This document shows positions 5,909 to 35,725 of a DNA stretch of 64,000 bases, piece by piece. The number at the start of each line of letters is the position of its first letter. Positions within the stretch are counted from its first letter, which is position 1. The position numbers and the translations under genes were made by a program. The DNA is from Macrostomum lignano (lineage: Eukaryota): the NCBI GenBank assembly GCA_002269645.1, contig NIVC01001129.1, positions 177,390-241,389 of the forward strand, read 5' to 3'. The notes under the pieces are model-generated. The model was not told the origin of the DNA, did no database searches, and worked only from the letters and a program-made list of their open reading frames with translations.

Positions 5909-6424
5909 TCATCAAATATTCGGACATTTTTAATTGTAACTAACTGAACTCGAATAATTAAACTCTTCTTTAAAACTTTTACGCAGAGCTTTTAGCCTTT
6001 GAAGAACACTATAAATGTCTCTATCTACCATAAATTTTAATGTAGAATAACCTGAGTGGCAGGGTTACCTTATCCAGAGTAAAGTGCATGAAACAGTCAA
6101 GCAGACATGCAGCTACGCTCGTATAGTTAATATAAGTACGAAGCACGAGTGCCTTGCATTTTCTAAAGGGTTTTTTCAGGACTTCTCATAGCCGATATTT
6201 TTTGTTTGTCCAGATGTTAACAAATGGAGTCGTTTTAAGATAAAAAATTCCTAAATATTTTAGTCTGTGATTTTTCTGCAACAAAAATTCCTGCCTTGGC
6301 TTGTAAATCGTAATTGTGCCTCGATTCGTTTGGGCCACAAACGATTGCGCTGAAGGAAATTGTGAACTAAGTAAATTTTTGCGCGCCTTTCAGGCATCGA
6401 AACAGGAATACAACAGATTGCTTA

Positions 6425-9783: not shown

Positions 9784-9980
<197 letters not shown>

Positions 9981-12955: not shown

Positions 12956-13486
12956 AAGTTTGTCCAAGTCAAAATGCTGAAGAATCTTGGAAAAATGATG
13001 GCTCTTCTGAATCGCTGAAAGAAAAGTTTGTAAGCGTACACTGTGTAGAATTTTACACTGTTTCCCAATCATAAAATATTTTTTATGGAGGAATATCCTG
13101 CAAAAATAAATAATTGTAATGGAAAGTCACTGGATTTAGGAAGTTACAAAATGATTGGTTAGCGAATTTTGGCTTTCAAAACAGAATAGACGTTGAATAC
13201 GAGCTTAAACCAACAATTATTGTCCATAATCTACATGCAAAAACTTTATTGAACTTTCATTTGCCTTTGCAGAAGCAATGCTGATCGTTTCGTTGACTGA
13301 GTTCATTCAACATGTTCAAGGATGCTATGCTTCAGTTTTTTAAGCCAATTGTAATTCACCACCGTTTTGATTGGTTTAGAAACCTTGCATTTAAGATTTG
13401 GCCACGTCGCACTTCCGATTTCCTTGCAAGCAACAAAACTGCATTTTCTAAATAATTTCTTTAAATAGCTGGGATAAATTTGAAAA

Positions 13487-16400
13487 ATGAAAACGTTGAA
13501 TTTAATTCTGCTTCTGCTTTTCTGCTTCCAGTTCGCTGAAAATGTGCTTGGTAAGAATTGATTCGATTTAGAAAAGCTGTACTTTTTGTCTCAGAACTCT
13601 GTTATTAGTGAACTGCTATTAGTAGACTGCTATTAGTAGACTGCTATTAGTAGACTGCTATTAGTAGACTGCTATTAGTAGACTGCTATTAGTAGACTGC
13701 TATTAGTAGACTGCTATTAGTAGACTGCTATTAGTAGACTGCTATTAGTAGACTGCTATTAGTAGACTGCTATTAGTAGACTGCTATTAGTAGACTGCTA
13801 TTCAGAGAAGCATAAGGTATAACGCCTATTGATTTCAACTCTGTATTTTATGAATCCGTGCTTTTAATAGCCTAGCATAGAGTATAATTTGTTAGACTTG
13901 ACCAGAGTTAGGCTAAATTGGAAAATGTTCCGTCAAATGTCTGCAGGTGCCGAGAAAATCACCGTTCCCAAAAACAAGCCTGCTAAGCAGTCTTCGAAGT
14001 TCCACTCAAACGACGACCCAGCCCTGGCCAACAACGGCAACACCGGCGGCTCCCTTGTGCGCCTGTCGAACTGCTTCGAGTGCGCGAACAACGACCCGCT
14101 ACCCTGGTGGATGGTTGACATGGGCGAGATCTACTTTGTCCACCAGGTGAAGGTGTGGAACAGAATCAACTGCTGTGCTGACCGGTTTCGGCAGGTTAGC
14201 GTTGGTAAGTTGCTGCTGCGAAGCTTAGATTGCTGCATGGCTTTGAGATAGATCGATCGGGCAAAAAACTACAGTAAATAGAGAAAAATTTACTGGTGTT
14301 GTATCAAGAAATGTTTTGCTAAGCAAAAGCAAGCTACAGGGCAACGATGAAAATACATGTTTGTTAACGCTTCATGTTCAACGGTATAAACGGAGATCTA
14401 GAACACTCAGATTTACTCAAACTCAGAAACATTGCACAAACAATAAAATATTAGTATTTATATTCAATCAGAAAATGTTTGTGGAATTCCCAAGTATGTG
14501 CCAAAAAGACTTTTGATAGGGCATTACTTTACTTTGCAGCAGAGGGCTTTCAGGGATGAAATGCTATATGCGTTTGAGCTTTAAATGGATGCTTGTAAGA
14601 GGTCCCTTTCATGTAGTAACACGTGCGATGGTCTAAAATTGTGGTAGCATTGTCCATGCATGTTGCCGATTCTCTGTACGGGGTCCGAATTCGGGCTTCA
14701 AAGCAGCTTATCCATGACGAGCTTCACGATCTGAGCTTCACGGGCTGAGGACTTCACCTTGCAGTCCACCTTTCTGGACCTCAACAGAACGGGAGTGTCC
14801 CAGGAGGTGCAAGGTGGCAGTCCGATGGGAGAACATGATGTACATGATCAAGCGAGTGAGTTGCTCGTGCGGGCCACTTGATTAAAAAGCACGGTATCGA
14901 AGGTACCAATTTTTTTCGTAAAAACGAATGTTGAGCACCATGCGTTTCAATTTGTTGACAATGGCGTGCAATGCGATTTAGATAGAACGGTCCAGACCGA
15001 AAGACGCGCCGGTTGCAGGGGGGGGGGGGGGAGACGCCAGAGCCCATCCGTTCTATCAGTTTAACAGTAGAAAGACCACGCTATTTTTCCACATGGGGAA
15101 AGACCATGGGATCCCGGCTCGTCAGGGCCGCGTGGTGGCACTCCGTTGAATTCGAAGGTCCCGAAGGTCGTCCAGACAGAGCTGAATGCTGAACATGGTG
15201 CAGGACCATTGTATAATACGCAGACATACCTGGTTTGGTCCTTGATAGAAAAATCACGATGTTGGCGGTGTCAGCTCGTCGGGGCCGCGTGGTGGCCCTC
15301 CCTTAAAGGTCCCGAAGGTCGCCTGTATGTCACAGGTCAGCCTAGAGGGTCACCCTCGTCCATTTCATTCACCGATTATGTCTACTGACTGAATGCTGCA
15401 TGCAGAAGAGGATTCTTCCACTTCAGTTTTGGAAACGCAGCCGTCTCTGGGATACCGATCAGGTGCTTTTGTTGAAGGTCCCGACAGTCGCCGCCGATGC
15501 TCCAGACGGTGATGAAGGGGACCCTGGTGCCTGAGATGCTGAGAGCAAAAGTCCCTGCGACTGATATGCATAGTTTGTTGAGCCGACGTGGTTTCATGAT
15601 GAAATTTTGTGAGCAGAAAATTTTTTGCCATGTTGGTGGTTTTTGCCACCAGACACCCCGAGGAGAATCGCTGAATATCTCAACGATGCCGATTTTTGTG
15701 ATTCTCGAAGTTGCTTCATCAAATAGAGCGGAAATTTTTTAGCCCGTGTTCTAGATTTTCATGGCAATTGGTTGAATATTCTTGGAGATCGAGACAAAGG
15801 AAAAATTTGTGTATTTGAAATACACCCCATGGTCTTTCTACTGTTATAGGCGATAACGCTAGGGAGGATCGATAGAGAGAAATACAGTACAAGCGCATAA
15901 AACACTGCACAAGGCGAGTATGCATGTAATGTGATGAGTTAGAGACTCTAAGAAGAACAGATTGGTGTTCGCTGGTGTCAGATTGATATTGCAGGAAGCT
16001 TTGGCAGGGTGATAGTCTCCCTTCCATGGTTTTGAGATAAAGACAATCGTGGCTTCCTGCCAGCCACGGTTGCTGAGGAGGTCGAGGAACCTGTCATTTT
16101 CACTGCAGCCTGCTGCTTGAAGATTTTTTCAAGAGTCGAAGAGTTTCCTCTTTCCTGCCAATCAAATTCTCTCCATATTCCAGGTGTGGCTAAAAATCCC
16201 ATCGTATGGACGTCCTTCAACCAGGATCTGTTCGAACGCTGCGGCTACTGGCCCGGGGTGGCCACGGTATCTGATAATCCCATCATATTAACCTGCCCCA
16301 GCCCCATCGGAGGCAGGTACCTGGCCGTGTACAAAAACACCAGTGGACTGAGCGACGGCAGTGCCAGGCTGCACTTTTGCGAGGCTGACATCCTGGCAGG

Positions 16401-18110
16401 TTAGATGGGCCTTTGTAGCTTTGGTAGCTCTTTTGTAGTATTCTGGCAGTTTAAATACAGAATTAGAAAATTCTAACAAAAGAAGCGTCTCTCCAGTCAA
16501 TAAAAAATCACTTCTGAAATCTATCCAGAAAAAAATCTGAATTTTGCACCACGGATGTCTTCAGATACTAATCACAGTTACATAGTTTTGATAGAGCTGA
16601 TTGATGGGCAACTCGGGCCACTGCAGAGGCAGATTCCAGCCAAGGTCTCTGTTGTGTATTGAACGCGTGGGTTTTTTATGCGCGTGAGAATAAGAATTGC
16701 GGAGTCTCGACTGACTCCGCTGCTTTACATTTATATTTGTTAGTAAATGAAGCGTGCACGTTGGGTGTATACACCTGGCCGATCGGCTAAATGTTAAGCA
16801 ATGCTTGAGTTGAATACAATATTGTTGAAACATAAATACGATACAACTGAAGTACTCCATACTAGTACTTAGTACTCACGCCACAACAGTCTCCCTGAGG
16901 AGTGGTTCCTCGACGTTTCCTCGAAATTTAAAATAAGTTGATATAGCTCGTAAAAGACAAGCATGTTTCACTCAAGGACTACTAGACTAGAAGGACACTT
17001 GCAAATCGTGCAAAAATGGTTGAAGGCCGATTATTAAAATGTCTGTATCTCCGAATCGATTGCATGTAGGCTACTTTATTTCGACAGATTGTTCAGATTT
17101 TTGTTCCCTACTGAGTAAGTTTAGTTTCCCACTAGATGTAGATGCTAGAAAAGACTGTACAATCGAGACACCTATATTTTGGGGCGTTTGGTATTTAAAT
17201 CTGTAAGTTTAGGAACCAAATTAATAAAGTGGTGAAAATCTTAGGCGCAAGTTTTTGTGAATACGCTCGTAGTGTCATTAGTGACATTAGTGACGTTTCT
17301 GAAAATATATCGGAGCCTGGAGATCATATACAGAACCCGCATACTTTGGCCTATAGCTACCAGTATCCTTTAAAAACTTGCTTATAAGATGGCCAGTCAT
17401 CAAAAATGAGTGAGAGGAAAAAGTCAAACATCACGAAGCAGACTCCTCTTTTAACATTCTGTTCTAGACAATCTGTAAATTGAAGTGGCAGTAGAATTTA
17501 GCAAGCAAGAAAGAGTTTTGTTTAGTTTATTTGCTTATAATGTTCGCACGGATTCGAACCATGGATGCTTACGCCACTGAGCTACTCGACCTCTTTCACC
17601 TTCGGGGCCAGGAGCATTACTCGTACAGCAATGCATCCATCCATCGATAGGCATCTCGGGCCACTGTAAAAGTATATATATGTCAGCGACGTCGGATTGC
17701 AGTACAGGTTACCTGGTTAAAATTCATGTATTCGAAATTCAGCAGCTGCCGTATTGAATTTAAGTCACAAATATCGGCATCCTTATAGTTCGCTCTGTAC
17801 TAATACAACCTAAAGTTATTAAAACATTTTTTGAATAAAAATTTCAGTCCTAAAGCCGTCCATGATCTCGTTCGAGGCTAAGGTCATTCCGCCAAGGTTC
17901 TCAACGAAGCCAGCCGACTCGCAGCTCGATGGCTCTCCAATTGCTGTCAAGTCGGACATCGCCTGCGTGCGTGAGTGCGGCAGCCACCCAATGTGCCTCT
18001 ACACTTTGTACAAGCAGGGCAACTGCTGGCTGTTCTCATCTGGCAGCATCTCCGATAGCTTCATCAGCATCCTGAGCGGTGGAGATGCCAAGTTTATGCA
18101 GCTGAACTAA
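13487..18110 (+). CDS. Secreted F-type lectin + PAN/apple protein, copy 2 (266 aa)
   Basis: Exons 13487-13550, 13947-14204, 16184-16399, 17848-18110; same sizes and phases as copy 1; GT-AG intact. Confidence 0.9.
13612..13802. repeat. 14-bp minisatellite, ~13.6 copies, intron 1 of copy 2
   Basis: Same unit as 1977-2097. Confidence 0.95.
15062..15846. mobile_element. MITE-like element (paralog of 3349-4134)
   Basis: Same 17-bp inverted ends. Confidence 0.6.
16650..16888. mobile_element. 239-bp solo LTR in intron 3 of copy 2
   Basis: TGTTGTG...CACAACA ends with a perfect 5-bp TSD GTCTC (16645-16649 / 16889-16893); absent from copy 1 intron 3 (~5145). Confidence 0.9.
17541..17594 (-). other. 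Truncated tRNA-derived (SINE-head-like) fragment
   Basis: Minus strand TAGCTCAGTGG (A box) and GGTTCGAATCC (B box) with the anticodon arm missing; not a functional tRNA. Confidence 0.4.
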
Positions 18111-18734
18111 TCATCAAATATTCGGACACTTTTAATTGTAACTAACTGAACTCGAATAATCAAACATTTCTTTAAAACTTTTACGCAGAGCTTATAGCTA
18201 ATGCTGAAAGAATAAAAAAGTGTCTCTATCTACTTACAAATTTTAATGCTGAATAATACCCTCAATGGCAGGTTTATCTTATCCAGAGTAAAGTGCGGGA
18301 AGCAGTCAAATATTTGACAAATTATCTGTTCAATCGGATTTCCAATTTTACAACAATTTTGTTTCTAATTATTTCAAATTTGTAATAACACTATCGAAGA
18401 CAGCTAGTTAGTAAGTACGAGTGCATTGCGTTTTCTAAACGGAATTTTTCATTTTTTAGGATTCGATGCATGGCTTATCATACCGATCTTTTGTCTTTGT
18501 CCAGATGATAAAGAATGGCGTCGTTTCAAGATAAAAAATTCCTAAAATTGTTGGTCCGACCGGGCGTAGCTTGGTTGGGTGTTAAACCAGTGGGGCGTGG
18601 CTCTTGTGCGTTGGTGCGGGGGGTGGTGGGCCGGGCCTTGGTCACGTGCCCGCGGCCTGGGTGGCGTTTATTTAATACGGTGCGGGCTGTCGCTGACCCG
18701 CCAAGCGCGTATTGATTTTTTTTCAATTTTTGCA

Positions 18735-19853
18735 ATGGCTGACCGCGACAAACTTATGCACCTGAGCAAGGTGGCTCTGCAAGCCTTGTGTGCCCACGCT
18801 AACATAAGCAGTCGGGGCAACAAGGCCGACCTTGTCAGCGCCCTGCTCGCAGCCCCAGACCAGTCGTGGACAGATTCGCTGTTGCAGAACATGGAGCAAT
18901 CTGAGCAAGAAGCCGAAGCAGACGACAACATCAGTACGGAGGCGGCTCGGGAGTCGGCGGCGGGCCTGGACGAGGACATCGCGAAGGCGGAGAAGGAGAT
19001 CAGACTGTTGTAGCTACGCAAGGAAGCCGCTCAACTCAAGAGGGAGATCAGAGATCTGCAGCGCGAGTGTCCATCCGCGCGTCCTATGAATCGCGGTGAG
19101 TGTGCCAAGCCTGCTGGCCCCAGTTACTTTCCTGATGGGTGTGATGATGCTGAATTAGACCAAGCTGATAATGGCAATGAGCTGCTTGACAGATTGTTGT
19201 CACAGAACAGGGCCAATGAACGGATGGAGTGTTCTGGTAGACGTAAGGCTCTCCTGGTTCGTGATTTCCTCGACGGCTTTGAGCAGGAAGAGGTGCTGGC
19301 TAATGGTTCTGGTGGCCGAATCACTTACAAGAGCAGAAAACCTAATCCAGATAGCATCACGGCAGCGCAGTATTTGGTAGGCAATTGCAGGCTGATGATG
19401 CAGATGATCAAGGATGGTGCCCTGGTGACTAGTAGAAATGGAACTGCCGACACGACTGATTTGATGAATTACTTACGCTACTCAATACAGATTGGCGAGC
19501 TGTTTGACGCGGGCTTCGGCCTTGCGCAGGTGAATCGTTTTGACGAGGACTACCGCACTAGGCAAGCTGAAACTGGCATGCGATGGGGCAAGGAGTCTTT
19601 CCAACTCGTTGCTAAGCACTTAATCAGAACTGGAACTCCAGCAAACCATGGAGTCAGCAAGTCTTTGCCCCAGCCACGGCAGCAGCGTTTTCAAAAACCA
19701 ATAGACCCCAAGAGCCTCAGAACGCCAGACGGGGAAGAGATCTGCTTGCACTTTAATCGCCGGGGGTGCTTCCGGTCGAGCTGCAAATTCCGGCACGTCT
19801 GCCGCATCTGTTTCGAGGCCCACCCTGAGGCCAACCATTCGACAAAAAACTGA
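18735..19853 (+). CDS. Gag-like ORF1 (SAP-like N-terminus, coiled coil, C-terminal CCCH/CxxC zinc finger), with one in-frame TAG
   Basis: ORFs 18579-19013 and 19086-19853 share a frame and are separated only by TAG 19011-19013. Motifs LMHLSKVALQALCAHANISSRGNKADLVSAL and CLHFNRRGCFRSSCKFRHVCRICFEAH. Confidence 0.8.
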
Positions 19854-19861
19854 AGTCTGCG

Positions 19862-21671
19862 ATGCTCTGTTTTAATCCTAAAATTTTGCCTAATGCTCAG
19901 CCTGCTTTAAATTTTAACAATCCTGTCGTTGGCAGTGCAGGGGGTCGCCTGCGTTTTTGTTCGTGGGATTCTGAGCTTGAGAATGACCCTGATCGGAATT
20001 TTATCCTAGACGGCATCGCAAATTGTTTTCGCATTACTGATGGCAAAGGGCTTTGTGAGACTTTTAATGCCAATTACATGTCTACTTCTACTTTTCATCG
20101 CGCTGTTGAGCTGCAAATTAAGGAAGAGATTGAGAATGGCAGGTATTTGATTGTGCCTAAGAAGCCTACGATGGTCAGCCCTCTGGGAGCAATTCCCAAG
20201 GATAACGGGAAGGTTCGACCTATTCATGACTGCAGCACGCCTCCGGGCTACTCGGTAAATGACCATTATACGAAGAAGCTGAGCCCCAGGTTTGAGTCCG
20301 TCAAGAAGGTTGCAGCCTCTATCGGCAAGGGCTGGTTCATGGCAAAGCTTGACTTGTCGCAAGCTTACAGAAGCGTGGCGATCCATCCGGATGATTACCA
20401 GGCGACCGGCATTGGTTGGCGCTTTAAAGGCAACCGTGATCTGACATGGCTTGTCGACACCCGGCTACCCTTTGGTAGCTGCGCCTCGGTCGAGATTTTC
20501 TACCGGCTTACTCAAGCGGTCAAGAGGATGATGGTGCGACGCGGCGTGGCCAATATTTCGGTTTACCTGGATGATTTTCTGGTTGCGGCCGAGAGCGAGA
20601 AAGAGTGTATGGATGCTCTGAAAGAGCTGATTAAGCTGGTTCGCCAGTTAGGTTTTGGTGTCAATTGGAACAAAGTGGTTGAACCTACGCAATGCTTGGT
20701 GTATCTCGGTGTGAAGATTGATACTGTCCGTGGAGTTCTTAGTGTGCCGGCGGAAAAGTGTGAGGAAATGCGCACCACACTGCTTAACTTTTCGCAGCGC
20801 AGGCGTCTCTCGAAACGACAGCTTTCGTCGCTTTGTGGCAAGCTCAGCTGGGTCGTCCAGGTGGTGCACGCTGGGAGTTGCTTCCTAAGACCCCTGTTCG
20901 ACCTGCTTAATGCCCTGGAAAAGCCACGTCACAAAGTGCGAGTGTCCGCTGACACTGCGTATTTTACTCTGGTGGCGAGGTGCCCTTCTGAAGCTGCCTG
21001 ATTTTCAGCTTTGGAGAAGTTGCACAAACGGCTGGATCATCGAAACCGATGCGAGCAGTGCTGGTGGCGGAGCCATTTTGCGCAATGGTAGCGGTATGGT
21101 GGATTGGCTGTACGTCAATTGGGATCTGGATGCTGGAGGAAAGTTTAAAGACAAGCATATCACGTACAAAGAAGCTATTGTTCCGCTACTGGCTATGGTT
21201 CGCTGGGGTGCCTTTTTAAATGACAGTTCGGTCGTGGTCTACTCCGACTCTAGTGCGACTGTTGGCATGATTAACAGAGGTTGCTGTCGGCAGCCTGAGT
21301 TGCAGCCGCTGTTCCAGACTGCCATGCTCATTGCTGTTAGGCGTGGGGTTGAGGTGCGCGCTTTTCATGTGCCTGGCTGGTACCATGTCTTTGCGGACCC
21401 GTGCTCTAGGCTGCACGCCGTGGACAAAATGCGCGATTTTTTATTTCGGGTGTATGGCTCTGTTGACTGCTGTTTTAACGAGATCGCTAGCCATGCTTTC
21501 TGCCCTGCTGCCTCCATTTTTCTCATTTTACAGGCCCTCCGCGCCAGACTCCCGACCGCCTCAGCAAGCGTTGCGCGTTTATCCTGGGCAATGCCTACGC
21601 GCCCCGCACGAAGCGGAGTTACCGGTCGCAGCTCGCGTCTTGGCTGCGATTTTGCAATTCCCGGCACCTGA
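19862..21671 (+). CDS. DIRS-type reverse transcriptase + RNase H (one +1 frameshift at ~20962-20965)
   Basis: RT: KLDLSQAYRSV, RLPFG, YLDDF. RNase H: TDASSAGGGA, HITYKE, YSDS, ADPCSR. Removing one T from TTTT 20962-20965 joins ORFs 19862-21001 and 20910-21671. Confidence 0.9.
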
Positions 21672-22534
21672 CGCCGCTGCGGGCAGAGCCTGTGCACGTG
21701 GCTGAATACCTGGCCGAGCTGTCCACCCGGCTGTCAGCCTTTCGGAGTTGCCAGGCGTATGCTAACGCGGTCTCGCTGTACTTCAGAGCTCTCGGCCGGC
21801 CGGACCCGTGCGAGTCGTCGATGGTTAAGCTGGTGCTTCGTGGTCTTCGCCGGTGTCTCAGTCGGCAGCAGCGCTCAAGGGAGCCATTCAGAGTCACGGA
21901 TCTCCTCAAGCTACACGCCCACCTGGACCAACGTCTGAAGAGTGACATCGCGTTCTGGGCAGCAGTTCTGGCAGCCTGGTGGGGTATGCTGCGAAAAGCG
22001 AATGTGACGACGCAATCGGGGCAGCTCGATCTGTGGTGCGACCTGGCAGCATCGAGCATCGTCTTTTCAGAGTACGACTGTGAGCTCACTGTGCGGCATT
22101 CGAAGACCAACCAGTTTGGCGATCGAGTTCAGCGAGTGTTTCTTCCGAAACTGCCTGATGGAAGCTTGGGTGTCCTGTGCCCGTTCCGTGCGCTCGAGCG
22201 GCAGCTACGGACAAACCGAATCGGCCTGGCGCCGCGTCCGGTTCACCTGTTCTCCACGTGGTCGTCCGCGGGATGGTTGCCTCTGACGGCTAGCAGGTTT
22301 GATAGCCGGCTTCGTTCGCTCTGCACATCGGCGGGTTTGTCGCCACGCGAGTTCACTGGCCACGGGCTGCGGCGGGGCGGCGCTACGGCAGCCATGCGGC
22401 TCGGTGTTCCACTGCCGATGATCAAGAAGCTGTGCGACTGGAAGGGCAACTCAGTGTTTCGCTATCTATCTGTTCGGGACTCGGATGCCAGGGCGGCTGT
22501 GCATGGCTTGGCTCGTCGGGTTGGCGCGCTCTAA
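21491..22534 (+). CDS. Tyrosine recombinase (ORF3)
   Basis: Frame open from 21491. N-terminal AYAPRTKRSY...WLRFC; catalytic R (MLRK), K (HSKTNQ), HGLRR, W and RYL residues present. First in-frame ATG is only at 21821. Confidence 0.92.
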   Translation, partial: PCFLPCCLHFSHFTGPPRQTPDRLSKRCAFILGNAYAPRTKRSYRSQLASWLRFCNSRHLTPLRAEPVHVAEYLAELSTRLSAFRSCQAYANAVSLYFRALGRPDPCESSMVKLVLRGLRRCLSRQQRSREPFRVTDLLKLHAHLDQRLKSDIAFWAAVLAAWWGMLRKANVTTQSGQLDLWCDLAASSIVFSEYDCELTVRHSKTNQFGDRVQRVFLPKLPDGSLGVLCPFRALERQLRTNRIGLAPRPVHLFSTWSSAGWLPLTASRFDSRLRSLCTSAGLSPREFTGHGLRRGGATAAMRLGVPLPMIKKLCDWKGNSVFRYLSVRDSDARAAVHGLARRVGAL

Positions 22535-23939
22535 CTCTCTCTCTCTCTCTATGTCGAACTTTCTGGTTTGGGTTGGGCCAGGCTCGAACCTGCGCCTCTC
22601 GTGCCAACTGCCTTGACTTCGTCTCACTGGTTTAATAACGTCAGTTAGTTGTTGCTGCTAAATTTCTGCAACAAAAATTGCTGCATTTGCTTTGCAATCG
22701 TAATTTGTTCCTCCCACTTACTACTCAGACTAATGCTGATCAGGAACTGTAGTAAATTTGGCTGAGTAAATTTGAGTTTTCCTCACTTAGAAAGTGTCTC
22801 AGGATCCCCTCGCTAGTTTTCTATTCTTACAAAGGCCAATAAATCTGTGAAGTGTCTGCACGTCGAAGGCTCCAAGACAATCAGAAGATTTCGACTACAT
22901 TTCTTCTTTTACTCAAAAACACTCTAGTGAAAAAAATTATCTTCAAAGACTTTATTGTCAATTCTCTTTCACAATACGAGGTATCTATATAGGCGCACAT
23001 GTGCTACAAGCACTGGGATTTCTGTAAAGTCTGTTGCGATCCTATTCCCAAAAGATTTCTGAGCTTGAAAGTAGTTGTTTTTTCCACAATTGCGAACCTT
23101 CTATGATTCTTAAGACTCGTAGAAAAAGGCTCTTGAAAATGTTCCTACCGCATTGTCCTTACTTGGGGGTTACTGACTTCAAGCAAGCCTATGAGAAACT
23201 AAAAGTTCCTGCGAATCTAATTTTATTCAATATTAACTATAAAGCGAATCTCCTAAAGAACTTCTTGTTGATTTAAAGTAAGTAGCTCGTATGCTCGATT
23301 CCAACAAATTCATATCTCTCTCGTATTTCTCAGACGCATCCGATTCTGTGTGAGTTTCTTTCTCCCATTTCTAAGAATTCCTTCTGAGTTTGGACAGGTG
23401 ATGTCGCCAGACGAAATTCTCACGAGTTTGAAATTCTTGCCTCGCATTGTTTTCAGTTCCAGCTATATTGACACTACTGGAATGGGCACTAGTTTGGTTG
23501 GTCCAAGCACTAACAGGCTCTAAGAATATCTGACATAACTAAGGTGGATGCATGCATGGTGCCTTTTATGTCCATTGACATGCATGCAAACTTATACAAG
23601 ATGGTACAGATTTCATCAGCTAAATATCCCTTTGAGGCTGTCACCCATGACAAGCTCACCCACACAAATCATAAAATAGCTACAAGTTAGATTTGCTGGT
23701 GTCATCGCAGATTCACATTTAGATTTTAGTAAAGCTGCACTAACTTACTTACTGCGAGTAGTGTGCTTGGGAAAAGTAATTAAAGAGTGTATTTGCTCAA
23801 AGCATCTCCGACTGTAAATATTATTGATTGCATATAGTTTGTCAGAAAAGTCAAGGCGGACTGTGCATAACCAATATTTATAATATTAATAATACTACTC
23901 ATTCGCACTCATACACACGCACTCATTCACACGCACTCA

Positions 23940-25430
23940 TACACACGCTCACACAGGGTTTAAAGTGACCTGAATTTCTAATCGTCAGGCATGTACACTG
24001 TGCCTTGGCGGCTGGCCCTCGTGGCTGTGAATCGCACGACAATCCGCCGGCCAATTATTGGTGCACACAAGCCCCAAATGAATATGGCGCTGGCGCCCCT
24101 GGTGCTGGCGCTCCTGGTGCTGGCGCCTCTGGTGCTGGCGCCCCTGGTGCTGGCGCCCCTGGTGCTGGCGCCCCTGGTGCTGGCGCCTCTGGTGCTGGCG
24201 CCCCTGGTGCTGGCGCCCCTGGTGCTGGCGCCCCTGGTGCTGGCGCCTCTGGTGCTGGCGCCCCTGGTGCTGGCGCCCCTGGTGCTGGCGCCCCTGGTGC
24301 TGGCGCCCCTGGTGCTGGCGCCCCTGGTGCTGGCGCCCCTGGTGCTGGCGCCCCTGGTGCTGGCGCCCCTGGTGCTGGCGCCCCTGGTGCTGGCGCCCCT
24401 GGTGCTGGCGCCCCTGGTGCTGGCGCCCCTGGTGCTGGCGCCCCTGGTGCTGGCGCCCCTGGTGCTGGCGCCCCTGGTGCTGTGCTGGCGCCCCTGGTGC
24501 TGGCGCCCCTGGTGCTGGCGCCCCTGGTGCTGGCGCCCCTGGTGCTGGCGCCCCTGGTGCTGGCGCCCCTGGTGCTGGCGCCCCTGGTGCTGGCGCCCCT
24601 GGTGCTGGCGCCCCTGGTGCTGGCGCCCCTGGTGCTGGCGCCCCTGGTGCTGGCGCCCCTGGTGCTGGCGCCCCTGGTGCTGGCGCCTCTATTGCTGGCG
24701 CCCCTAATCGCGTCTGAATTTTGGTTCGATTCGGTGCTTGTGAGCTCGAAAATTGGCCTTTGGGCTTTTCGTGCAATTCACGCACATGATGGCCAGCCTC
24801 CAAGGCACAGGGAGTGTTGCAGAGAGGATTAGAAAGTGTGAGAAGATTTCGCTTTAGCACACTAGAGAGAGGGGAAAGGAGAGAGAGAATTAGGTCTAAG
24901 TGTCTAAACGCTCGAACTCCCACTTCCAGACACTAAGTCTGGGAACAAAAATGTAGTGCACTTACTGTTGCAGGCTCCTCGTCTTTGTCGGGCAGGTTCT
25001 CCGAGCTCGTGTCTTCAAATCTTCTTCTCCGGAGGAATCCCTCAGAGATGTAGCCTCGAGTAGCCTCTGCAGTAAGCTCAAGATGTTTTGAGGCTGCTCC
25101 GAGTCTGAGATTTTTAGCTCGGATTTTGGCTTGTATTTATAGGAAAACTTCGTGAAAAAACAGATTATTTTAGTAGGTGACAGTTTTGCGTTTTAGAAAT
25201 TTGACCCCTATAGAATACATTAGGTTTGAGCATCGAATACCATATTCAGAGTTCTAATTTTAAATGTTGCACAAGATGGTCATTTGTTGCTTTCATGGTC
25301 TTAAATACAGTGTGACAATTTGCAGTTTTTAGCTTTTGAGTTTTTACGTTACTACTTATAGTACTTTACTTTGTACCGTATTTGGAGATCTCTACAAGTC
25401 AAGGCCGCTGTAAACACTGTATTTGGGCGA
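23940..25430. mobile_element. Fold-back module 2; 15-bp array 24086-24705 (~41 units); right arm interrupted by a solo LTR
   Basis: Same arms as 8495-9115. Confidence 0.75.
24837..25396 (-). mobile_element. 560-bp solo-LTR-like insertion
   Basis: Minus strand TGTAGAGA...TCTCACA ends with an internal CCTATAAATAC. Absent from the unit-1 arm (9085 AAATTGTCAAGG). TSD ambiguous (AG or AAGT overlap). Confidence 0.7.
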
Positions 25431-26040
25431 CTGTAAAACAATTATTGTACAAATTATCAATGCATCATACAGCGTTTCAAATGTAAATAATAAATATGAA
25501 CAAGATAAAACCGATGCTTTTAAATCTGCATGCACAACGTGTTCGCGCATCCACACAGCTTGCTGATCCTCTATTTGATGTAGCAACTGACCGGAAGCTT
25601 CCAGTTTTGTAGCTGCTGTTACTGCATTGTCGATCAGACAAACAGCCTGAGGCAGCACAGAGCAAGCTAAATATGAGCTAGAGATGAGAACTTATCGCGA
25701 AGAAGAAGTTGCATTAGCTAATAGCAGAAACTGAAGCAAGCAGTCATGGTGACAGGATGCTTGCTTTTCTTGAAAAACTTATCTAAAAGGCGCACTAATG
25801 GATCCACACGCAGTTTAATGGGCAAACAAAGTTTGCCATTATGTTTGCTCGCTAACTGAAAGCTAGCCAAGCTTTAAGCGTTTTAGTGTTCTGAATGGCT
25901 TCCGCTGACTGATGGACAGCTAGATAAGACAAACCGGAGAGATTGGAAGACAATTTTGCTACTTTTGAGCATTCACGATTGCATAGGAGTTTAGTTACTC
26001 CAGTATCCTGAGAAACTGGTGCGAAGTTTCTACTTTACGC

Positions 26041-26081
<41 letters not shown>

Positions 26082-26082
26082 A

Positions 26083-26129
<47 letters not shown>

Positions 26130-26168
26130 ATTTCTACGCTAACTATCTATCTATCTATCTATATATGG

Positions 26169-26254
<86 letters not shown>

Positions 26255-26255
26255 A

Positions 26256-26304
<49 letters not shown>

Positions 26305-26328
26305 AAACTACACCCATAAGGATACATG

Positions 26329-27233
26329 TGTAGTGACTGGCTGCTAACTAGCTATTCAGCAGCATTCACTAGCTTTCCCTAAGGGTGCTGTGATCCGCTG
26401 CACAGTAGCTCAGTCCACCTGATCTAGTGAGAGAGATACCCTGTGCTGGGCCTAAGTGTTTACTGCCCGATGACTCATCGCCTGAGCAGGCGCGGGCAGC
26501 CACACTCAATGTCTTTCCACTCGCGCTGAGGAGGCGTAGCAGGATGACTCATCACCTGCGCGGAGTGTAAGGGCTGCCTAGAGGGAGTAAACAGGATGAC
26601 TCATCCGCCCATGTTATATTTTTAGCACAGAAAAGCACGTGACTGTGCACGCACACTGTGCGTGGCCACTGACCTTGAGTCACGCCACTGCTGCGTGACA
26701 GGCTTGCCTTATTTGGAAGTTGGCCTTGAATCACGCGTCGCTCGCATGATTTTAGTGACCAAATAAGGAAGTTTCACGCGCTCACCGCATGAAACTCACG
26801 TGACTTTTGGGAGTCCGCTCGGCTATAAATACGGAGCATCTGCGAGCCATTTTTCTCCAGATCGCGTCGTCCTGCCTGAGCTCGACCGGAGCTGCCTCTC
26901 TGCCTCCGAGCTCTCCTCTCTCATTTCAGGTTTTACAGGTTTTCAGGTTCGAGCAGCATTTAACTAAGACGATCGACTGTCGAGACGTTTTTCAGATTTG
27001 CCTTTGCTCCGAGCGACTTCATTATTTTATTTCAGGTGACGGATAGACAACTCTGCCGACGCGTCGAGTCCGCACACCAAGGTGGCAGCAACCCTACCAA
27101 GTCAAGGCTAACGTTTTAGGTTCTTTTTCAGGCAAATCGATAGGTAGTACAACGGTACTACCTAGCTACTTCAGGAGCAGCGGGTTCTATTTCTAGGAAC
27201 ACCTTCAAGAACTCGGGAAGGAGTAGTACATCA
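26329..27233 (+). mobile_element. 905-bp solo LTR with TATA box and four AP-1-type sites
   Basis: TG...CA ends with a 4-bp TSD CATG (26325-26328 / 27234-27237). TATAAATA at 26824. TGACTCA at 26471, 26545, 26597 and TGAGTCA at 26676. Confidence 0.85.
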
Positions 27234-27820
27234 CATGCCTGAAGATTAGAAAGTCAGGGTCGCTGCACACCCTGAGCAAGAGTGTGCATGAGTGCTGTGC
27301 CTGCGTACAGTATTGGCGCGCTTGCATGTGCGCAGGAGCCGGCGGAATGGGCAGAATTGCGATCAGCGCTGCTTGTGGGATGATGTCGCCGAAGGCTTTG
27401 CGCTATGATGCCAACAACCTTTCTTAACTCTTCTTTTTGATAAGTTGATACCGGTATTCTCAGTCACTGGATTTACAGAGCTAGACAATTATTGGCGTTT
27501 CACTCGTGTTGGTTTCAAACACCTGAATAAACGTTAAATACCGGAAATCAATCGTCCAAAATATTATTGAATTTTCATAAATTATTTGCCTTTGCAGAAA
27601 CAGAGCATATCGAGTCCACTACTGATCGTACATTTAACGTGGTCAAGGATGCTATGCTTCAAATATTTCAACCCAATTATAATTCCCCCTCTTTGTGATT
27701 GGTTTAGAGAACATGTATTTAAGTTTTGACACGACGCATTTCTGATTCCCTTTGGAAGCCATTTCCATTTGAAGCATAAAAATTTATTCTGAAAAATCAT
27801 TGCTTCAAAAAGCTAGGGAA

Positions 27821-30800
27821 ATGAAAACGTTGCCAATGATCTTCAATTTAACTCTGCTGCTGGTTTTCTGCTGCGATTTCGCTCAAAAAGTGCTTGGTAG
27901 GTTTGATTTAACCGCGTCTATCTATCTGTCTATCTATCTATCTATCTACGCTATCTACTATCTATAGCCAGGACCTGCACCGGAGCGGTTACGAAAATTA
28001 GATTTCTCGGTAGTTGCACGTACTCTTTTGCACTACTTGAGTAGTCTGATTTTCGTTCGGCATGGCTGGTTCCAGCAGGTGGTTTTGTCTCGCATAGAGA
28101 CGCCTAACCGCAGTCACTTCTGTGAAACTTGTCTCTGCCTGGCTGAAAGCTTGTAATGAGTGAGTAGGCTGGGTTGGAGGGTAATAGTGGATCGGGAGGG
28201 GCTGTGGGTAGCTGTATAGGAAGGCAGGCCTATACCTGTACCAAGGTGCTCTGACGGTATCCCTCAGGCGCCCTCTGAGCGTACAGCCAGCGACCCTATT
28301 AAAGCTGGAGTGTGCCAGAACCAGGACTGAGTCTGAGCAGGACGAGACCGTTGGCACGGTCATAATAGAAATGGCGGGTTGGCGAAGCAAAGGGTGAAAT
28401 AGTCCCGGCGATTAGCCCTCCTGCCGCTTCAAAGATAAGAGACTGTCTGTTGGCAAGAGTACCCGGGGTTTAGTTGGGGGGGAGGCTCCTTCGGGTTGCC
28501 ACGGCCGTGGGGGCGGTCTTATGACCGGTGTTTTGGCCTATCTAACCCAGGAGAAGGCACGGGCTCCCCTGAATGGTTCACTCTTCTCCCTCTAGCCTCG
28601 GGGAGGTTTATGATTTGTACCCGGGGGTGGTGGGCGGTCGGCCCCAGCATGGTAGCCACGGCTCTAGGCCTTCGGGCCATCCCTAATAGGCTTGGGTCTA
28701 TCTAACCTGGTTTTTGGGCACGGGCTTCCTGACTGGTATGTCGTTCCGCTGTCACTGTCCCCGGGGAGGTTTGGTTTTTTTGATACAGCCCTGTACAGTC
28801 CTCTATAGTCTAACTTGGCTTTTAGTGTACATTAGTACACTCCCTAGTAGGAAACTTATTTATGTCTAGTGGCGTAAGAGCCTATTTCAATGGCTGAGGC
28901 GCCGGAGCACTTATTTAGTTAGTTAGTTAGTCGTTCGGCATGGCTGGTTCCAGCAGGTAGTTCCTCTGGATAAAAGCGCTTACCGCGCCCATTGGCTTTC
29001 CAGCTGCCTTAATCGTTTCCGGTGATCTTGTGTGCGTGCTTTCAGCTTGATTGGCTGCGGCTTGGTGACAACCGGCAAGAGGCATTGCTGCCCATTCCAC
29101 CGACTCCCCTGTGCAGGCACACAAACGCTTGGATATATACGCACAGGCACTCACTCACACAGGAGTGTACAGCGGCCCTAACTTTATTTATCGTTTTGTC
29201 TTGGGGCTTTGGCCCTCAAGGCCATAAAGTGCACGAGCAGAGCCAAGCCGAGATTCCAATTTAGCCCCAAACTGATGTGACTGCACTTGGAATCGAGCCT
29301 GGGCCGCTGGCACACCAGAGCGCCGCGACAGACCACTGGGCTCCGCCCCTCCTAGACTGCTGTTAGTAGAAGCTCGAGATGGGACGTCCAATGAGAAAAT
29401 ATTTCAACTCAGTTTTCTATGAAGAGGTAGCTTCGACAGATCGAATTGAGATTGATACACAAGAATAGGTAGCTTTGGGCAGATTTAACGAATTAGACTA
29501 AATAAATAAATATACTGTCATATGTGCATCGTCTGCAGGTGCCGAGAAAATCACCGTTCCCAAAAACAAGCCTGCTAAGCAGTCTTCAAAGTACCGCTCA
29601 AACGACGACCCAGCCCTGGCCAACAACGGCAACACCGGCGGCTCCCTTGTGCGCCTGTCGAACTGCTTCGAGTGCGCGAACAACGACCCGCTACCCTGGT
29701 GGATGGTTGACATGGGCGAGATCTACTTTGTCCACCAGGTGAAGGTGTGGAACAGAATCAACTGCTGTGCTGACCGGTTTCGGCAGGTTAGCGTTGGTAA
29801 GTTGCTGCTGCGAAGATTTTTTAATCCATTGTTTTACATTAACTACGAGTACATTGCAGCGATGGCAAAAATTTAGGTTTGATTTTTTTCTTTTTCACTA
29901 GTGTACATGTATCTTTTACTAATCGAAATGCTGAGAGCGGCATAAAGCTTGCATTTTGTGTTGGCATATTGGTAGCAATTTCGAGTATTTTATGTCAGCT
30001 CCATTAATCCGAATCAGTTCGACGAGTCTGACTGGTCAATATGCTATAGACGATTATCTTTTTGAAAGGGCAAGAATCACCTGGCAGGCTGGAGCTCAAT
30101 GCTTTATGCCTGCCGCTTGAGAGATTGTTGGTAATTACGAGCGTAATATTAACTTTGCACAAATATTAGCCTGCCTCCAAATTTCCAGAGATTTTTCCAT
30201 AAGAGACTTATGGGATAGTCTTCGTACTTTGAAGATTCGGGCACCTGGCTCAATGTTTCTACTTTGCTAACCCCTGAAATATGCCTCCCTAATCAAATCC
30301 TCTCTATATTCCAGGTGTGGCTAAAAATCCCATCGTATGGACGTCCTTCAACCAGGACCTGTTCGAACGCTGCGGCTACTGGCCCGGGGTGGCCACGGTC
30401 GCTGACAATCCCATCGTGTTCACCTGCCCCAGCCCCATCGGAGGCAGGTACCTGGCCGTGTACAAAAACACCAGCGGACTGAGCGACGGCAGTGCCAGGC
30501 TGCACTTTTGTGAGGCTGACATCCTGGCAGGTTAGATGGACCTTTGTACGAGCGTAGCTTTGGTAGTTCCTTCATATAATGCTCTGGCAGTTCAAATATA
30601 GGAATAATGGGCTACATCACCGTCACTGAGTGTTACTTGGGCTGATTAATAGGCAACAAGATTAAGACGCGCCGGTAGATACTGAGCTACCGTATTTAAT
30701 TTAAGTCACAATTATTGGGTATTTCTAGTTCGCTCTTGACTATCACCTTATTTTATTAAAAATATTCTTAAAAATTAAATTTCATTCCTAAAGCCGTCCA

Positions 30801-31048
30801 TAATCTCGTTCGAGGCTAAGGTCATTCCACCAAGGTTCTCAACGAAGCCAACCGACTCGCAGCTCGATGGCTCTCCGATTGCTGTCAAGTTGAACATCGC
30901 CTGCGTGCGTGAGTGCGGCAGCCACCCAATGTGCCTCTACACTTTGTACAAGCACGGCAACTGCTGGCTGTTCTCATCTGGCAGCATCTCCGATAGCTTC
31001 ATCAGCATCCTGAGCGGTGGAGATGCCAAGTTTATGCAGCTGAACTAA
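27821..31048 (+). CDS. F-type lectin + PAN gene copy 3; exon-4 acceptor mutated (probably lectin-only product or pseudogene)
   Basis: Exons 27821-27896 (MKTLPMIFNLTLLLVFCCDFAQKVL), 29539-29796, 30315-30530 and [30786-31048]. The acceptor reads TTCAT (30781-30785) instead of TTCAG. Confidence 0.8.
28053..28958 (+). mobile_element. ~850-bp insertion ending in (TTAG)n and bounded by a 28-bp direct repeat, intron 1 of copy 3
   Basis: TCGTTCGGCATGGCTGGTTCCAGCAGGT at 28053 and 28931, with TTAGTTAGTTAG just before the second copy. Paralog at 37725-38650. Confidence 0.55.
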
Positions 31049-31260
31049 TCATCATATATTCGCCAACTAACTGAACTCGAATAATTAAACTCTTCTTTAA
31101 AACTTTTACGCAGAGCTTTTAGCCTTTGAAGAATACTAAAAATGTCTCTATTTACCTATAAATTTTTTATGTAGAATAACCTGAGTGGCAGGGTTACCTT
31201 ATCCAGAGTAAAGTGCATGAAACAGTCAAGCAGACATGCAGCTACGATCGTATAGTTAAT

Positions 31261-31398
31261 AAATTAAAATAGCCTAAAGCCTGATCCGGAAAATTTGCAG
31301 TTTTCCCATATAAGTTTCGACGCTGACTTGCCAGAATTGTAGGAGTTCACTTACAACATACAGACAGACAAACATCGCGTCAGTTTTTGTATTAGGGG
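31261..31398 (+). mobile_element. 138-bp Helentron-associated (HINE/DINE-1/Lep1-like) insertion
   Basis: Absent from unit 1 (6130 TTAAT|ATAAGT). Contains ACAGACAGACAAAC and ends TTGTATTAGGGG(AT); no TSD. Confidence 0.5.
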
Positions 31399-35667: not shown

Positions 35668-35724
<57 letters not shown>

Positions 35725-35725
35725 A

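What the first reader, a model, noticed from the sequence alone, without database searches (positions are those of the whole stretch)
18582..22635. Element ends are complementary through stems completed by G.U wobble, implying RNA-level end pairing
Seen: 18582-18597 pairs with 22620-22635 over 16 contiguous pairs (2 G.T). After a 12/11-nt internal loop, 18610-18625 pairs with 22593-22608 over another 16 contiguous pairs (5 G.T/T.G). Every non-Watson-Crick position within these two stems is a wobble. Established: DIRS1-type elements have DNA-level inverted terminal repeats plus an internal complementary region, while Ngaro/PAT have split direct repeats. I found neither an ICR nor split direct repeats here. 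Inference: the transcript circularises by base pairing to guide template switching and circular cDNA formation, an unusual terminal architecture.
Basis: partly seen in the sequence, partly recalled or inferred. Interest (0 to 1): 0.72.

Follow-up and report, generated by a model that had tools for sequence, protein, structure and literature searches.

The report
Retrotransposon ends form split RNA hairpin
A young but already broken Ngaro-type tyrosine-recombinase retrotransposon, in a genome like that of the flatworm Macrostomum lignano, lacks its relatives' split direct repeats, and its two ends instead pair over about 61 base pairs, a quarter of them G.U wobbles, on the sense strand only.

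Summary
The two 16-bp stems exist as described. Pairing extends to 61 pairs (37 G-C, 9 A-U, 15 G.U) between 18582-18657 and 22565-22635. The joined ends fold at z = -7.6 on the sense strand and z = -1.9 on the antisense strand.

The element runs gag (SAP plus CCCH), RT, RNase H, YR, with no methyltransferase. Its RT is 97% identical to a Macrostomum lignano protein. Paralogous empty sites in the window show that it has no A2-X-B2 module and no ICR.

Relatives (36-50% RT identity) carry canonical Ngaro split direct repeats. They also carry a long, G.U-rich, sense-biased hairpin that starts at a conserved GGTTTGGG motif just after the YR stop, and they end in GGTTTAA. The window copy has the same motif in the same place and the same end motif. 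Here the partner strand of the hairpin lies at the element's 5' end, so the family hairpin appears split by the integration junction.

Transitions between the arms are 13-19 wobble-compatible against 1-2 A.C-type. The coding region is about 97% intact, so the arm differences are not post-insertion decay.

Panhandle-guided template switching is plausible but untested. Whether the whole family lacks split repeats is also unknown, because only this one copy could be retrieved.

The parts
18582..18657 (+). 5' arm of the panhandle, which would be the descending strand of the hairpin if the ends were joined. It is G-rich and A-poor. Over 18582-18665 the composition is G40 C20 T19 A5.
   Evidence: (outermost pair 22565-18657).
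22565..22635 (+). 3' arm of the panhandle, the ascending strand. It starts with the family-conserved G-motif GGTTTGGGTTGGG (22565-22577) and ends with the family-conserved end motif GGTTTAA (22629-22635).
   Evidence: the B ends of relatives read ..GGTTTAA; GGTTTGGG occurs once in the 64-kb window on either strand, at 22565.
18582..18592 (.). Perfect 11-bp terminal inverted repeat TTAAACCAGTG, paired with CACTGGTTTAA at 22625-22635. It is a candidate recombinase binding and crossover region. The first 4-5 nt (TTAAA) may derive from the target, by analogy with relatives.
   Evidence: One search shows left flanks GTTAAA, GTTGAA and ATTTAT next to A1 in L084, L083 and L082.
22625..22635 (.). Right-hand copy of the perfect 11-bp terminal inverted repeat (CACTGGTTTAA).
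18732..19853 (+). gag-like ORF with an N-terminal SAP domain and a C-terminal CCCH-type zinc knuckle. It is broken by one in-frame stop, TAG at 19011-19013, where P0001 has Gln.
   Evidence: (SAP, E = 3.7e-5).
19862..21001 (+). Reverse transcriptase ORF (Pfam RVT_1, motif YLDD). Its 3' end is out of frame with RNase H. P0001 runs uninterrupted across the RT-RNase H junction, whereas in this copy its match shifts reading frame at about 20952-20972.
   Evidence: E = 1.1e-17; 97% identical to the M. lignano protein P0001.
20952..21671 (+). RNase H region, in a different reading frame from RT in this copy.
   Evidence: (this segment matches the segment next to RT in relatives).
21545..22534 (+). 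Tyrosine recombinase ORF (HGLRRGG ... FRYL). The frame is open upstream of the first start codon at 21692 and overlaps the RNase H ORF.
   Evidence: (Phage_integrase 25.2 bits, just below the 27.1 cut-off, E = 1.6e-5).
22536..22557 (+). (CT)n tract in the 3' UTR, between the YR stop and the G-motif.
18554..18581 (+). GC-rich 28 nt just left of the 5' arm, forming a small G.U-rich hairpin at 18555-18579. The empty-site paralogs lack it. It is unclear whether it belongs to the element or to the host, where it would be an indel.
6125..6340 (+). Paralogous empty site of the host repeat that carries the insertion. A second one lies at 31392-31610.

Best explanation
This is one recently inserted, already inactivated copy of an Ngaro-like tyrosine-recombinase retrotransposon (gag, RT, RNase H, YR; no methyltransferase) in a genome like that of Macrostomum lignano.

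Its relatives carry a long, G.U-rich stem-loop just downstream of the YR gene. That stem-loop folds well only on the sense strand, starts at a conserved GGTTTGGG motif, and lies a short distance before the element end motif GGTTTAA.

In this lineage the recombination junction lies at the tip of that stem-loop. In a circular or head-to-tail form the structure would be one contiguous hairpin of about 150 nt, with the crossover site (..CACTGG TTTAA CCAGTG..) at its apex. In the integrated copy it is split, so its ascending half is the element's 3' end and its descending half is the 5' end.

A full-length sense transcript would rebuild it as a 5'-3' panhandle. The excess of wobbles shows that the constraint acts on a single sense strand, most simply the RNA. 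It is neither symmetric DNA recognition nor random decay.

Inferred, not shown: the panhandle does the job that the A2-X-B2 redundancy does in relatives. It would bring the two RNA ends together, so that only full-length RNA is used and reverse transcriptase can cross from the 5' end to the 3' end to recreate the junction.
For: Identity and age:
- Pfam finds RVT_1, SAP and a near-threshold Phage_integrase match. There is no room for a methyltransferase domain.
- The RT is 97% identical to a M. lignano protein, and the differences from it show no directional bias.
- The only lesions seen are one gag stop and one RT/RNase H frameshift. The roughly 43% non-identity between the arms therefore cannot be post-insertion decay.

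Structure:
- 61 inter-arm pairs with 15 G.U.
- Co-fold energy is -107 kcal/mol on the + strand and -68 on the - strand.
- z = -7.6 on the + strand and -1.9 on the - strand.
- Aligning the 5' arm with the reverse complement of the 3' arm gives 45 matches, 13-19 wobble-type transitions and 1-2 A.C-type. By my own arithmetic, a two-way binomial gives P of about 1e-3 to 1e-4.

Family context:
- 85 related loci share the same gene order.
- Most loci with sequence downstream of the YR stop show a stem that starts at (G)GTTTGGG and closes on CCCAAACC. The outer base pairs differ in sequence between relatives.
- The relatives' long hairpins have 16% G.U (range 6-22%) and an E-/E+ ratio of 0.55-0.99. 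The window's joined ends have 25% G.U and a ratio of 0.56.
- GGTTTGGG occurs once in the whole window, 31 nt after the YR stop.
- The B ends of relatives read ..GGTTTAA, as at window 22629-22635. This was verified on three copies with different flanks.
- L073 and L085 have weak hairpins that straddle the B1|A2 junction.

No split repeats here:
- No direct repeats or ICR were found.
- Both flanks are host repeat, with empty paralogous sites elsewhere in the window.
Against: - Only one copy of this family could be examined, so covariation within the family is untested and the family's normal architecture is unknown.
- In the relatives with mapped ends (L082-85, L016) the conserved hairpin lies wholly inside B and the junction is outside it. 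The homology between 'split hairpin' and 'local hairpin' therefore rests on position, the G-motif and general character, not on an alignment or a covariance model.
- The empty-site paralogs lack about 41 nt that flank the arms here: 28 nt on the left and 13 nt on the right. The exact ends are therefore uncertain (18582-22635 or up to 18554-22648).
- There is no AATAAA in the 3' UTR (the nearest is about 200 nt downstream, in host DNA), and there are no transcript data. It is not known that any RNA carries both arms.
- With DNA energy parameters the strand asymmetry is small (-31.7 vs -27.1), so a sense-strand DNA structure is not excluded.
- All structures are predictions.
Confidence: 0.5

Rival explanations
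1. The family is a canonical Ngaro with split direct repeats (A1-int-B1-A2-X-B2), and this copy lost A2-X and one B by homologous recombination between B1 and B2, or by a similar deletion. The hairpin is real, but in intact copies it is local (B1-A2). The terminal panhandle would then be a by-product with no role of its own.
For: All relatives with mapped ends have split direct repeats. The literature reports that Ngaro copies often lack part or all of their repeats (PMC9210276). B1xB2 recombination would leave exactly A-int-B with precise flanks. In L073 the G-motif and the C-motif enclose B1-A2, so a junction-spanning structure exists in an element that has split repeats.
Against: B would be only about 55-70 nt here, a short substrate for recombination. 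In relatives the partner motif (C-motif) follows A2 only, not A1. Here the partner of the G-motif is followed directly by the 5' UTR and gag, which a simple B1xB2 product of the relatives' layout would not give unless A is longer in this family. No remnant of X or B2 is present.
Confidence: 0.27
2. The wobble excess is a mutational footprint, not selection. An originally near-perfect duplex RNA was hyper-edited A-to-I by an ADAR-type enzyme, or deaminated C-to-U on the sense strand, and reverse transcription fixed the changes as G.U pairs in this copy or its recent ancestor.
For: The direction fits. Relatives have A-rich descending arms (CCCAAACC; 73 T-A pairs against 10 T.G in basal stems). 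This copy has 12 T(3' arm).G(5' arm) pairs against 4 T-A, and its 5' arm has only 5 A in 84 nt. The T residues of the G-motif are conserved in the family, so an A-to-G change in the 5' arm is the parsimonious reading. This rival would still mean the arms paired as RNA.
Against: The arms also differ by 8-15 transversions and 5 gap columns, including a 12/11-nt internal loop, which editing cannot produce. Most putative edited sites follow a G, the least favoured 5' neighbour of known ADARs (my own knowledge; sites read). The 3' arm keeps 9 A. There is no A/G asymmetry in the coding region relative to P0001 (5 vs 4).
Confidence: 0.1
3. The arms act at the DNA level only. They would be imperfect inverted terminal repeats serving as recombinase binding sites or as a cruciform at the circle junction, as in DIRS1-type ITRs, with no RNA role.
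For: The outermost 11 bp are a perfect inverted repeat. If the ends were joined directly they would make a 22-bp palindrome around TTAA. Tyrosine recombinases typically use inverted binding elements around a short core (general knowledge). DIRS1 ITRs are also imperfect (PMC9210276). With DNA parameters the two strands fold almost equally.
Against: Beyond the first 11 bp the arms are only about 57% identical as DNA (45 of 79 columns). The transitions are strongly one-sided (13-19 vs 1-2), which symmetric duplex recognition does not predict. The outer base pairs of the relatives' hairpins differ in sequence while pairing is kept. That pattern fits a structure rather than a sequence-specific protein site.
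Confidence: 0.1
4. The complementarity is a chance or compositional effect of a G-rich 5' end facing a pyrimidine-rich 3' end.
For: G+U-rich strands fold well in general. Low-complexity segments in the window can give large co-fold gains (minimum -29.7 and -51.5 in genomic controls).
Against: z = -7.6 against dinucleotide shuffles. There are 45 identities in register, including two uninterrupted 16-bp stems and a unique 16-mer found only at the two ends. The arms sit exactly at the insertion boundaries.
Confidence: 0.02

Closest known systems
Ngaro-like tyrosine-recombinase retrotransposons (order DIRS; e.g. DrNgaro, DIRS-53_XT)
   Same: Same gene set and order (gag, RT/RNase H, YR), no methyltransferase, overlapping ORFs and no clear target-site duplication. 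The nearest relatives found here (36-50% RT identity) have A1-int-B1-A2-(X)-B2 with the internal repeats downstream of YR. They share the G-motif after the YR stop and the GGTTTAA end motif.
   Different: This copy has no A2, X or B2. Its A-equivalent and B-equivalent are complementary to each other over about 75 nt, whereas the ends of relatives with split repeats are not significantly complementary.
DIRS1-like elements (ITRs plus internal complementary region)
   Same: Imperfect inverted termini. In the Cappello model, inverted complementarity is used to restore or juxtapose the ends and form a circle junction (PMC7192593).
   Different: This copy has no ICR and no methyltransferase domain. 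Its arms are much shorter (about 75 nt, against 120-350 bp) and far more divergent as DNA. Its RT relatives are Ngaro-type. In DIRS-1 the ICR is experimentally essential (PMC7192593), and nothing equivalent exists here.
5'-3' RNA cyclisation in other reverse-transcribing elements and RNA viruses (Ty1 CYC5/CYC3, the bipartite primer-binding site of Ty3, panhandles of segmented negative-strand viruses) - from my own knowledge, not tested here
   Same: Complementary sequences at the two ends of the genomic RNA bring the ends together and are needed for efficient initiation or strand transfer.
   Different: Those interactions are short (about 7-15 nt) and coexist with LTR redundancy. Here the predicted duplex is about 61 bp and there is no terminal redundancy at all.
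The 3' stem-loop of this Ngaro clade (the relatives' local hairpin; not described in the papers I could search)
   Same: It starts at (G)GTTTGGG shortly after the YR stop, is 70-210 nt long, has 6-22% G.U and is sense-strand biased.
   Different: In relatives both strands of the stem lie in the 3' region (inside B), and the loop often contains AATAAA. Here the descending strand is at the other end of the integrated element, and there is no AATAAA.

Membership tests
Ngaro-like (YR retrotransposon without MT) | Encodes gag, RT/RNase H and a tyrosine recombinase in the same orientation | tested here: met
   (RVT_1 E = 1.1e-17; Phage_integrase E = 1.6e-5, 25.2 bits against a 27.1 cut-off, with the HxxR...Y motifs visible). 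One search shows the same order in 85 relatives.
Ngaro-like (YR retrotransposon without MT) | No methyltransferase domain | tested here: met
   The ORFs tile 18732-22534 with no spare coding space, and Pfam gives no MT hit.
Ngaro-like (YR retrotransposon without MT) | Split direct repeats A1 ... B1-A2-B2, with the internal repeats downstream of YR | tested here: not met
   No direct repeats were found in 16500-24800 apart from minisatellites. The element matches nothing else in the window. The right flank is host repeat with empty paralogous sites. The relatives do meet this feature.
Ngaro-like (YR retrotransposon without MT) | RT/RNase H groups with reference Ngaro sequences in a phylogeny | tested here: inconclusive
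   The nearest homologues have the Ngaro structure (split repeats, no MT). No tree with named reference Ngaro sequences was built.
DIRS1-like | Inverted terminal repeats | tested here: inconclusive
   The ends are inverted-complementary, but only 45 of 79 columns are identical as DNA. Complementarity is good only when G.U pairs are allowed, on the sense strand.
DIRS1-like | Internal complementary region matching both extremities | tested here: not met
   The terminal 16-mer, allowing up to 2 mismatches, occurs only at the two ends. No internal inverted or direct match to the termini was found.
DIRS1-like | Methyltransferase domain downstream of RT/RNase H | tested here: not met
PAT-like / VIPER-like | Split direct repeats (plus MT for PAT; kinetoplastid host for VIPER) | tested here: not met
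   There are no split repeats and no MT. The host signal is a flatworm.

The most novel reading that the evidence does not exclude
A lineage of Ngaro-like retrotransposons has given up split direct repeats altogether. It replicates from a non-redundant genomic RNA whose ends are held together by a panhandle of about 60 bp rich in G.U pairs. The recombinase crossover site sits at the tip of the corresponding hairpin in the circular form. Reverse transcriptase recreates the circle junction by an end-to-end jump across the panhandle. Such an element would be the missing intermediate between split-direct-repeat and inverted-repeat architectures of YR retrotransposons. PMC4157794 says such intermediates are required but 'not observed'.
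Probability: 0.22. Interest if true: 0.75.

Novelty: new variant of a known kind. Interest (0 to 1): 0.5.

Why it matters
How tyrosine-recombinase retrotransposons regenerate complete ends and a circle junction from an RNA is still largely a model. Only the ICR of DIRS-1 has been tested experimentally (PMC7192593). The terminal repeats are the main structural character used to classify these elements, and their evolution from one type to another is unexplained (PMC4157794).

Two results here bear on that. First, this Ngaro clade has a conserved, sense-strand-specific long hairpin next to the recombination junction. Second, one member has that hairpin split across the junction and no split repeats at all.

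Together these give a concrete, testable alternative to terminal redundancy: end juxtaposition by RNA pairing. They also offer a possible intermediate between the two known architectures. M. lignano is a transgenic laboratory model, so the prediction could be tested. If this copy turns out to be a deletion derivative, the finding shrinks to a description of a conserved 3' RNA structure in Ngaro elements.

Tried and rejected
Leads that gave nothing:
- Other copies of the same family. The only close protein (P0001, 97%, UniRef only) has no contig on record. Exact look-ups of the window's gag and RT ORFs found nothing. Exact-match scans of genome contigs and viral contigs with 28-33-nt terminal sequences found nothing.
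- Known RNA families. Rfam at gathering thresholds gave no match in the window, and no tRNAs were found.

Methods that were uninformative:
- RNAduplex on kilobase-long flanks pairs everything and tells nothing.
- An unanchored local 'pairing' alignment also ran into long low-density alignments and could not discriminate.
- An anchored-register tabulation of basal stems was too disturbed by bulges to serve as a formal covariation count. I therefore rely on the base-anchored list.

Readings considered and rejected or downgraded:
- 'Decayed perfect ITR' is rejected. The coding region is about 97% identical to another copy, with an unbiased substitution spectrum, while the arm transitions are one-sided.
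- A direct repeat TTGTTG (18548-18553 and 22649-22654) as the true insertion boundary, suggested by the empty-site alignment, is downgraded. The relatives' verified end motif GGTTTAA coincides with 22635, and the flanks next to the insertion are poorly conserved among paralogs and rich in indels.
- A covariance-model test of the joined ends was not possible, because the model search accepts only the window or stored loci.
Full report
**1. The observation**

- 18582-18597 (TTAAACCAGTGGGGCG) pairs with 22620-22635 (CGTCTCACTGGTTTAA) over 16 contiguous positions, 2 of them G.T.
- After an internal loop of 12 and 11 nt, 18610-18625 pairs with 22593-22608 over 16 positions, 5 of them G.T or T.G.
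- The repeat finder reports the first stem as I5.
- The terminal 16-mer occurs only at these two places in 64 kb. Chance expectation is 0.15, and no shuffle reached 2 matches.

The pairing is longer than reported.
- Co-folding the ends gives -107.4 kcal/mol on the + strand and -67.7 on the - strand.
- Folding the joined ends gives 61 inter-arm pairs from 22565/18657 out to the termini: 37 G-C, 9 A-U and 15 G.U.
- Against dinucleotide shuffles, the joined sequence has z = -7.6 on the + strand and z = -1.9 on the - strand.
- The intermolecular energy gain is -33.6 kcal/mol. Shuffled arms give -10.5 +/- 4.2 and random window segments give -7.7 +/- 4.7.

**2. What the element is**

The ORFs between the arms are as follows.
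- A gag-like protein with a SAP domain and a CCCH knuckle (18732-19853).
- A reverse transcriptase (19862-21001; RVT_1, E = 1.1e-17).
- An RNase H region (to 21671).
- A tyrosine recombinase (about 21545-22534; Phage_integrase E = 1.6e-5, with HGLRRGG...FRYL).

There is no room for a methyltransferase domain. The RT is 97% identical to a Macrostomum lignano protein known only from UniRef (P0001). The next hits are 50% identical or less and come from many animals and animal-associated metagenomes.

Against P0001, this copy has one nonsense codon in gag (TAG at 19011-19013, for Gln) and one frameshift between RT and RNase H (about 20952-20972). The other differences show no directional bias: 5 A/G against 4 G/A, and so on. 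The copy is therefore dead but young.

It is the only copy in the window.

**3. Boundaries, and the absence of split repeats**

The flanks belong to a host segmental repeat present three to four times in the window. Two paralogs (6125-6340 and 31392-31610) are empty at the corresponding position. There is therefore no space for an A2-X-B2 module, and no direct repeat or internal complementary region exists.

The empty sites lack about 41 nt that flank the arms here (18554-18581 and 22636-22648). That could move the ends outward. However, the flanks near the insertion are poorly conserved and rich in indels. In addition, the relatives' verified 3' end motif (..GGTTTAA) coincides with 22629-22635 (section 4). 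I keep 18582-22635 as the element, with that stated uncertainty.

**4. Relatives**

One metagenome scan returned 80 loci, and exact look-ups gave five more. All have the order gag, RT, RNase H, YR.

Many metagenome contigs close on themselves or are head-to-tail. Those with mapped ends are canonical Ngaro elements:
- L082, L083 and L084 are three copies with different flanks. A1 4295-4671 equals A2 9958-10334. B1 9633-9963 equals B2 10689-11019.
- L085, L073 and L016 have the same layout.

Their layout is constant:
- YR stop
- G-motif (GGGTTTGGG..TT)
- B (GGAGG ... AATAAA ... CCCAAACC ... GGTTTAA)
- A
- C-motif (CCCACCC..) plus spacer X
- B2, ending in GGTTTAA
- flank

The left flanks next to A1 carry core-like hexamers (GTTAAA, GTTGAA, ATTTAT). 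That is what a tyrosine-recombinase crossover in a short core would leave. A short junction sequence defining integration sites has been suggested for DIRS elements (PMC7192593).

**5. The family hairpin**

Downstream of the YR stop, most relatives have a stem that starts at (G)GTTTGGG and closes on CCCAAACC. The outermost base pairs differ in sequence from relative to relative while pairing is kept: CAGTG/CACTG, GAGAG/CTCTC, GTTGG/CCAAC, CAGGG/CCCTG and others.

The long versions of these hairpins are biased to the sense strand. G.U makes up 16% of pairs (range 6-22%) and the E-/E+ ratio is 0.55-0.99. An anchored stem score is also much higher on the + strand, for example 82 vs 36 and 69 vs 32.

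The window copy has GGTTTGGG exactly once in 64 kb, 31 nt after the YR stop. It has no local CCCAAACC. The partner of the motif is at 18640-18657, at the inner end of the 5' arm. The joined ends score 103 on the + strand and 48 on the - strand, higher than any relative. They have 25% G.U and an E-/E+ ratio of 0.56.

The simplest reading is that the terminal panhandle is the family hairpin, with the recombination junction (GGTTTAA) at its tip instead of downstream of it. Integration then splits the hairpin into the two ends. Weak junction-straddling hairpins in L073 and L085 show that this geometry is not isolated. By contrast, the ends of L082-85 and L073 are not complementary beyond shuffled controls.

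**6. RNA level or DNA level**

Aligning the 5' arm with the reverse complement of the 3' arm gives 45 identities, 13-19 transitions of the wobble-compatible kind, 1-2 of the A.C kind, 8-15 transversions and 5 gap columns. Random decay of an inverted repeat predicts equal numbers of the two transition kinds. By my own arithmetic, one-sidedness this strong has P of about 1e-3 to 1e-4.

The coding region is about 97% conserved, so the differences between the arms were inherited rather than acquired after insertion.

This supports a constraint, or an event, acting on the single sense strand. Two caveats remain.
- With DNA parameters the two strands differ little (-31.7 vs -27.1), so a sense-strand DNA intermediate is not excluded. 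The only documented DIRS cDNA intermediate, however, is antisense (PMC7192593).
- The direction of the changes (an A-poor 5' arm, and 12 T.G against 4 T-A where relatives have T-A) would also fit A-to-I hyper-editing of a duplex RNA fixed by reverse transcription. Transversions, indels, an unfavourable 5'-G context and the absence of bias elsewhere argue against editing as the sole cause. Even that rival requires the arms to have paired as RNA.

**7. Mechanism**

Shown:
- The structure is predicted to be strong, sense-specific and far beyond chance.
- It occupies the place of a family-conserved hairpin.
- This copy has no terminal redundancy.

Inferred:
- In a circular or tandem form the crossover core lies at the tip of a contiguous hairpin.
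- A full-length RNA from an integrated copy re-forms the hairpin as a panhandle.
- This juxtaposition replaces the role of A2-X-B2, by selecting full-length RNA and allowing an end-to-end jump or ligation that recreates the junction.

It remains untested. No transcript data exist here, the 3' UTR has no AATAAA, and the copy itself is inactive.

The main rival is that intact family members do have split repeats and this copy is a B1xB2 recombinant. Loss of repeats is common among Ngaro copies (PMC9210276).

**8. Comparison with known systems, and novelty**

By gene content and relatives the element belongs with Ngaro-like elements, but it fails their structural hallmark, the split direct repeats. 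It resembles DIRS1-like elements in having inverted ends, but it lacks their ICR and methyltransferase.

The literature I could search describes only these two architectures. It notes that intermediates between them 'are not observed' (PMC4157794). No paper links M. lignano with Ngaro.

I rate this a new variant of a known kind, with moderate interest. The structure and its family context are solid. The claim of a repeat-less replication strategy rests on a single dead copy.

Noticed in passing
window 5547-9980, 17744-26241, 30685-35869, 40376-40812; also 24280-31062 vs 33899-40754 (98%): The window is built from a segmental repeat of roughly 10 kb present three to four times at 87-98% identity. 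The retrotransposon sits in only one copy, so its insertion is younger than most of these duplications.
   Followed up: partly
window 24085-24705 (also 33899-34319 and about 8449-8958): A 15-nt minisatellite (TGGTGCTGGCGCCCC, about 41 copies, 96% matches) with 68% G+C and a strong AT skew. It recurs in each copy of the segmental repeat. A 14-nt repeat (CGCACTCATACACA) lies just upstream, at 23904-23948.
   Followed up: no
window 6322-7186 and 31591-32515, compared with 22713: The two empty-site paralogs carry a segment of about 870-920 bp that is missing from the filled copy, about 80 nt to the right of the retrotransposon. The matches on either side of it overlap by about 18 nt in the filled copy (22696-22713), which may mark a short direct repeat at its ends. 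It is either another insertion in the paralogs or a deletion here.
   Followed up: no
window 1583-4708 vs 13219-16429: Another repeat pair of about 3 kb at 95-97% identity, unrelated to the element.
   Followed up: no
window 18555-18579: A small GC-rich hairpin (TCCGACCGGGC GTA GCTTGGTTGGG), closed largely by G.U pairs, lies directly left of the 5' arm. It is absent from the empty-site paralogs, and it ends in GGTTGGGTG, which resembles the family G-motif. Its origin (element, filler or host indel) is unresolved.
   Followed up: partly
L010, L030, L031, L040, L042, L043, L046, L049, L050, L062, L074 (whole contigs): Many metagenome contigs of relatives carry identical overlaps of k-mer size at both ends, meaning they assemble as circles of 3.1-5.4 kb. 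L015, L061 and L077 are head-to-tail dimers of diverged units (85-95% identity). Both patterns fit B-A junctions, tandem integration into resident copies, or true circular DNA.
   Followed up: partly
L082-L084 10335-10350, L085 10504-10515, L016 4696-4710, L073 4069-4080: In every relative with split repeats, A2 (but not A1) is followed immediately by a C-rich motif (CCCACCC...), and B1 (but not B2) is preceded by the G-motif. B starts precisely at GGAGG inside the conserved TTTGGAGG. The split-repeat layout can be written as a full unit (A-int-G-B) followed by a short unit (A-C-X-B). That is what recombinase-mediated integration of a circle next to a resident short copy would give. This is speculative.
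   Followed up: partly
L020, L031, L036, L042, L043, L048, L075, L078, L082 hairpin loops; window 22535-22635: The relatives' 3' hairpins usually contain AATAAA about 15-25 nt before the descending CCCAAACC strand, so polyadenylation may fall inside the stem. The window element has no AATAAA or ATTAAA in its 3' UTR. The nearest AATAAA is in host DNA at about 22836.
   Followed up: no
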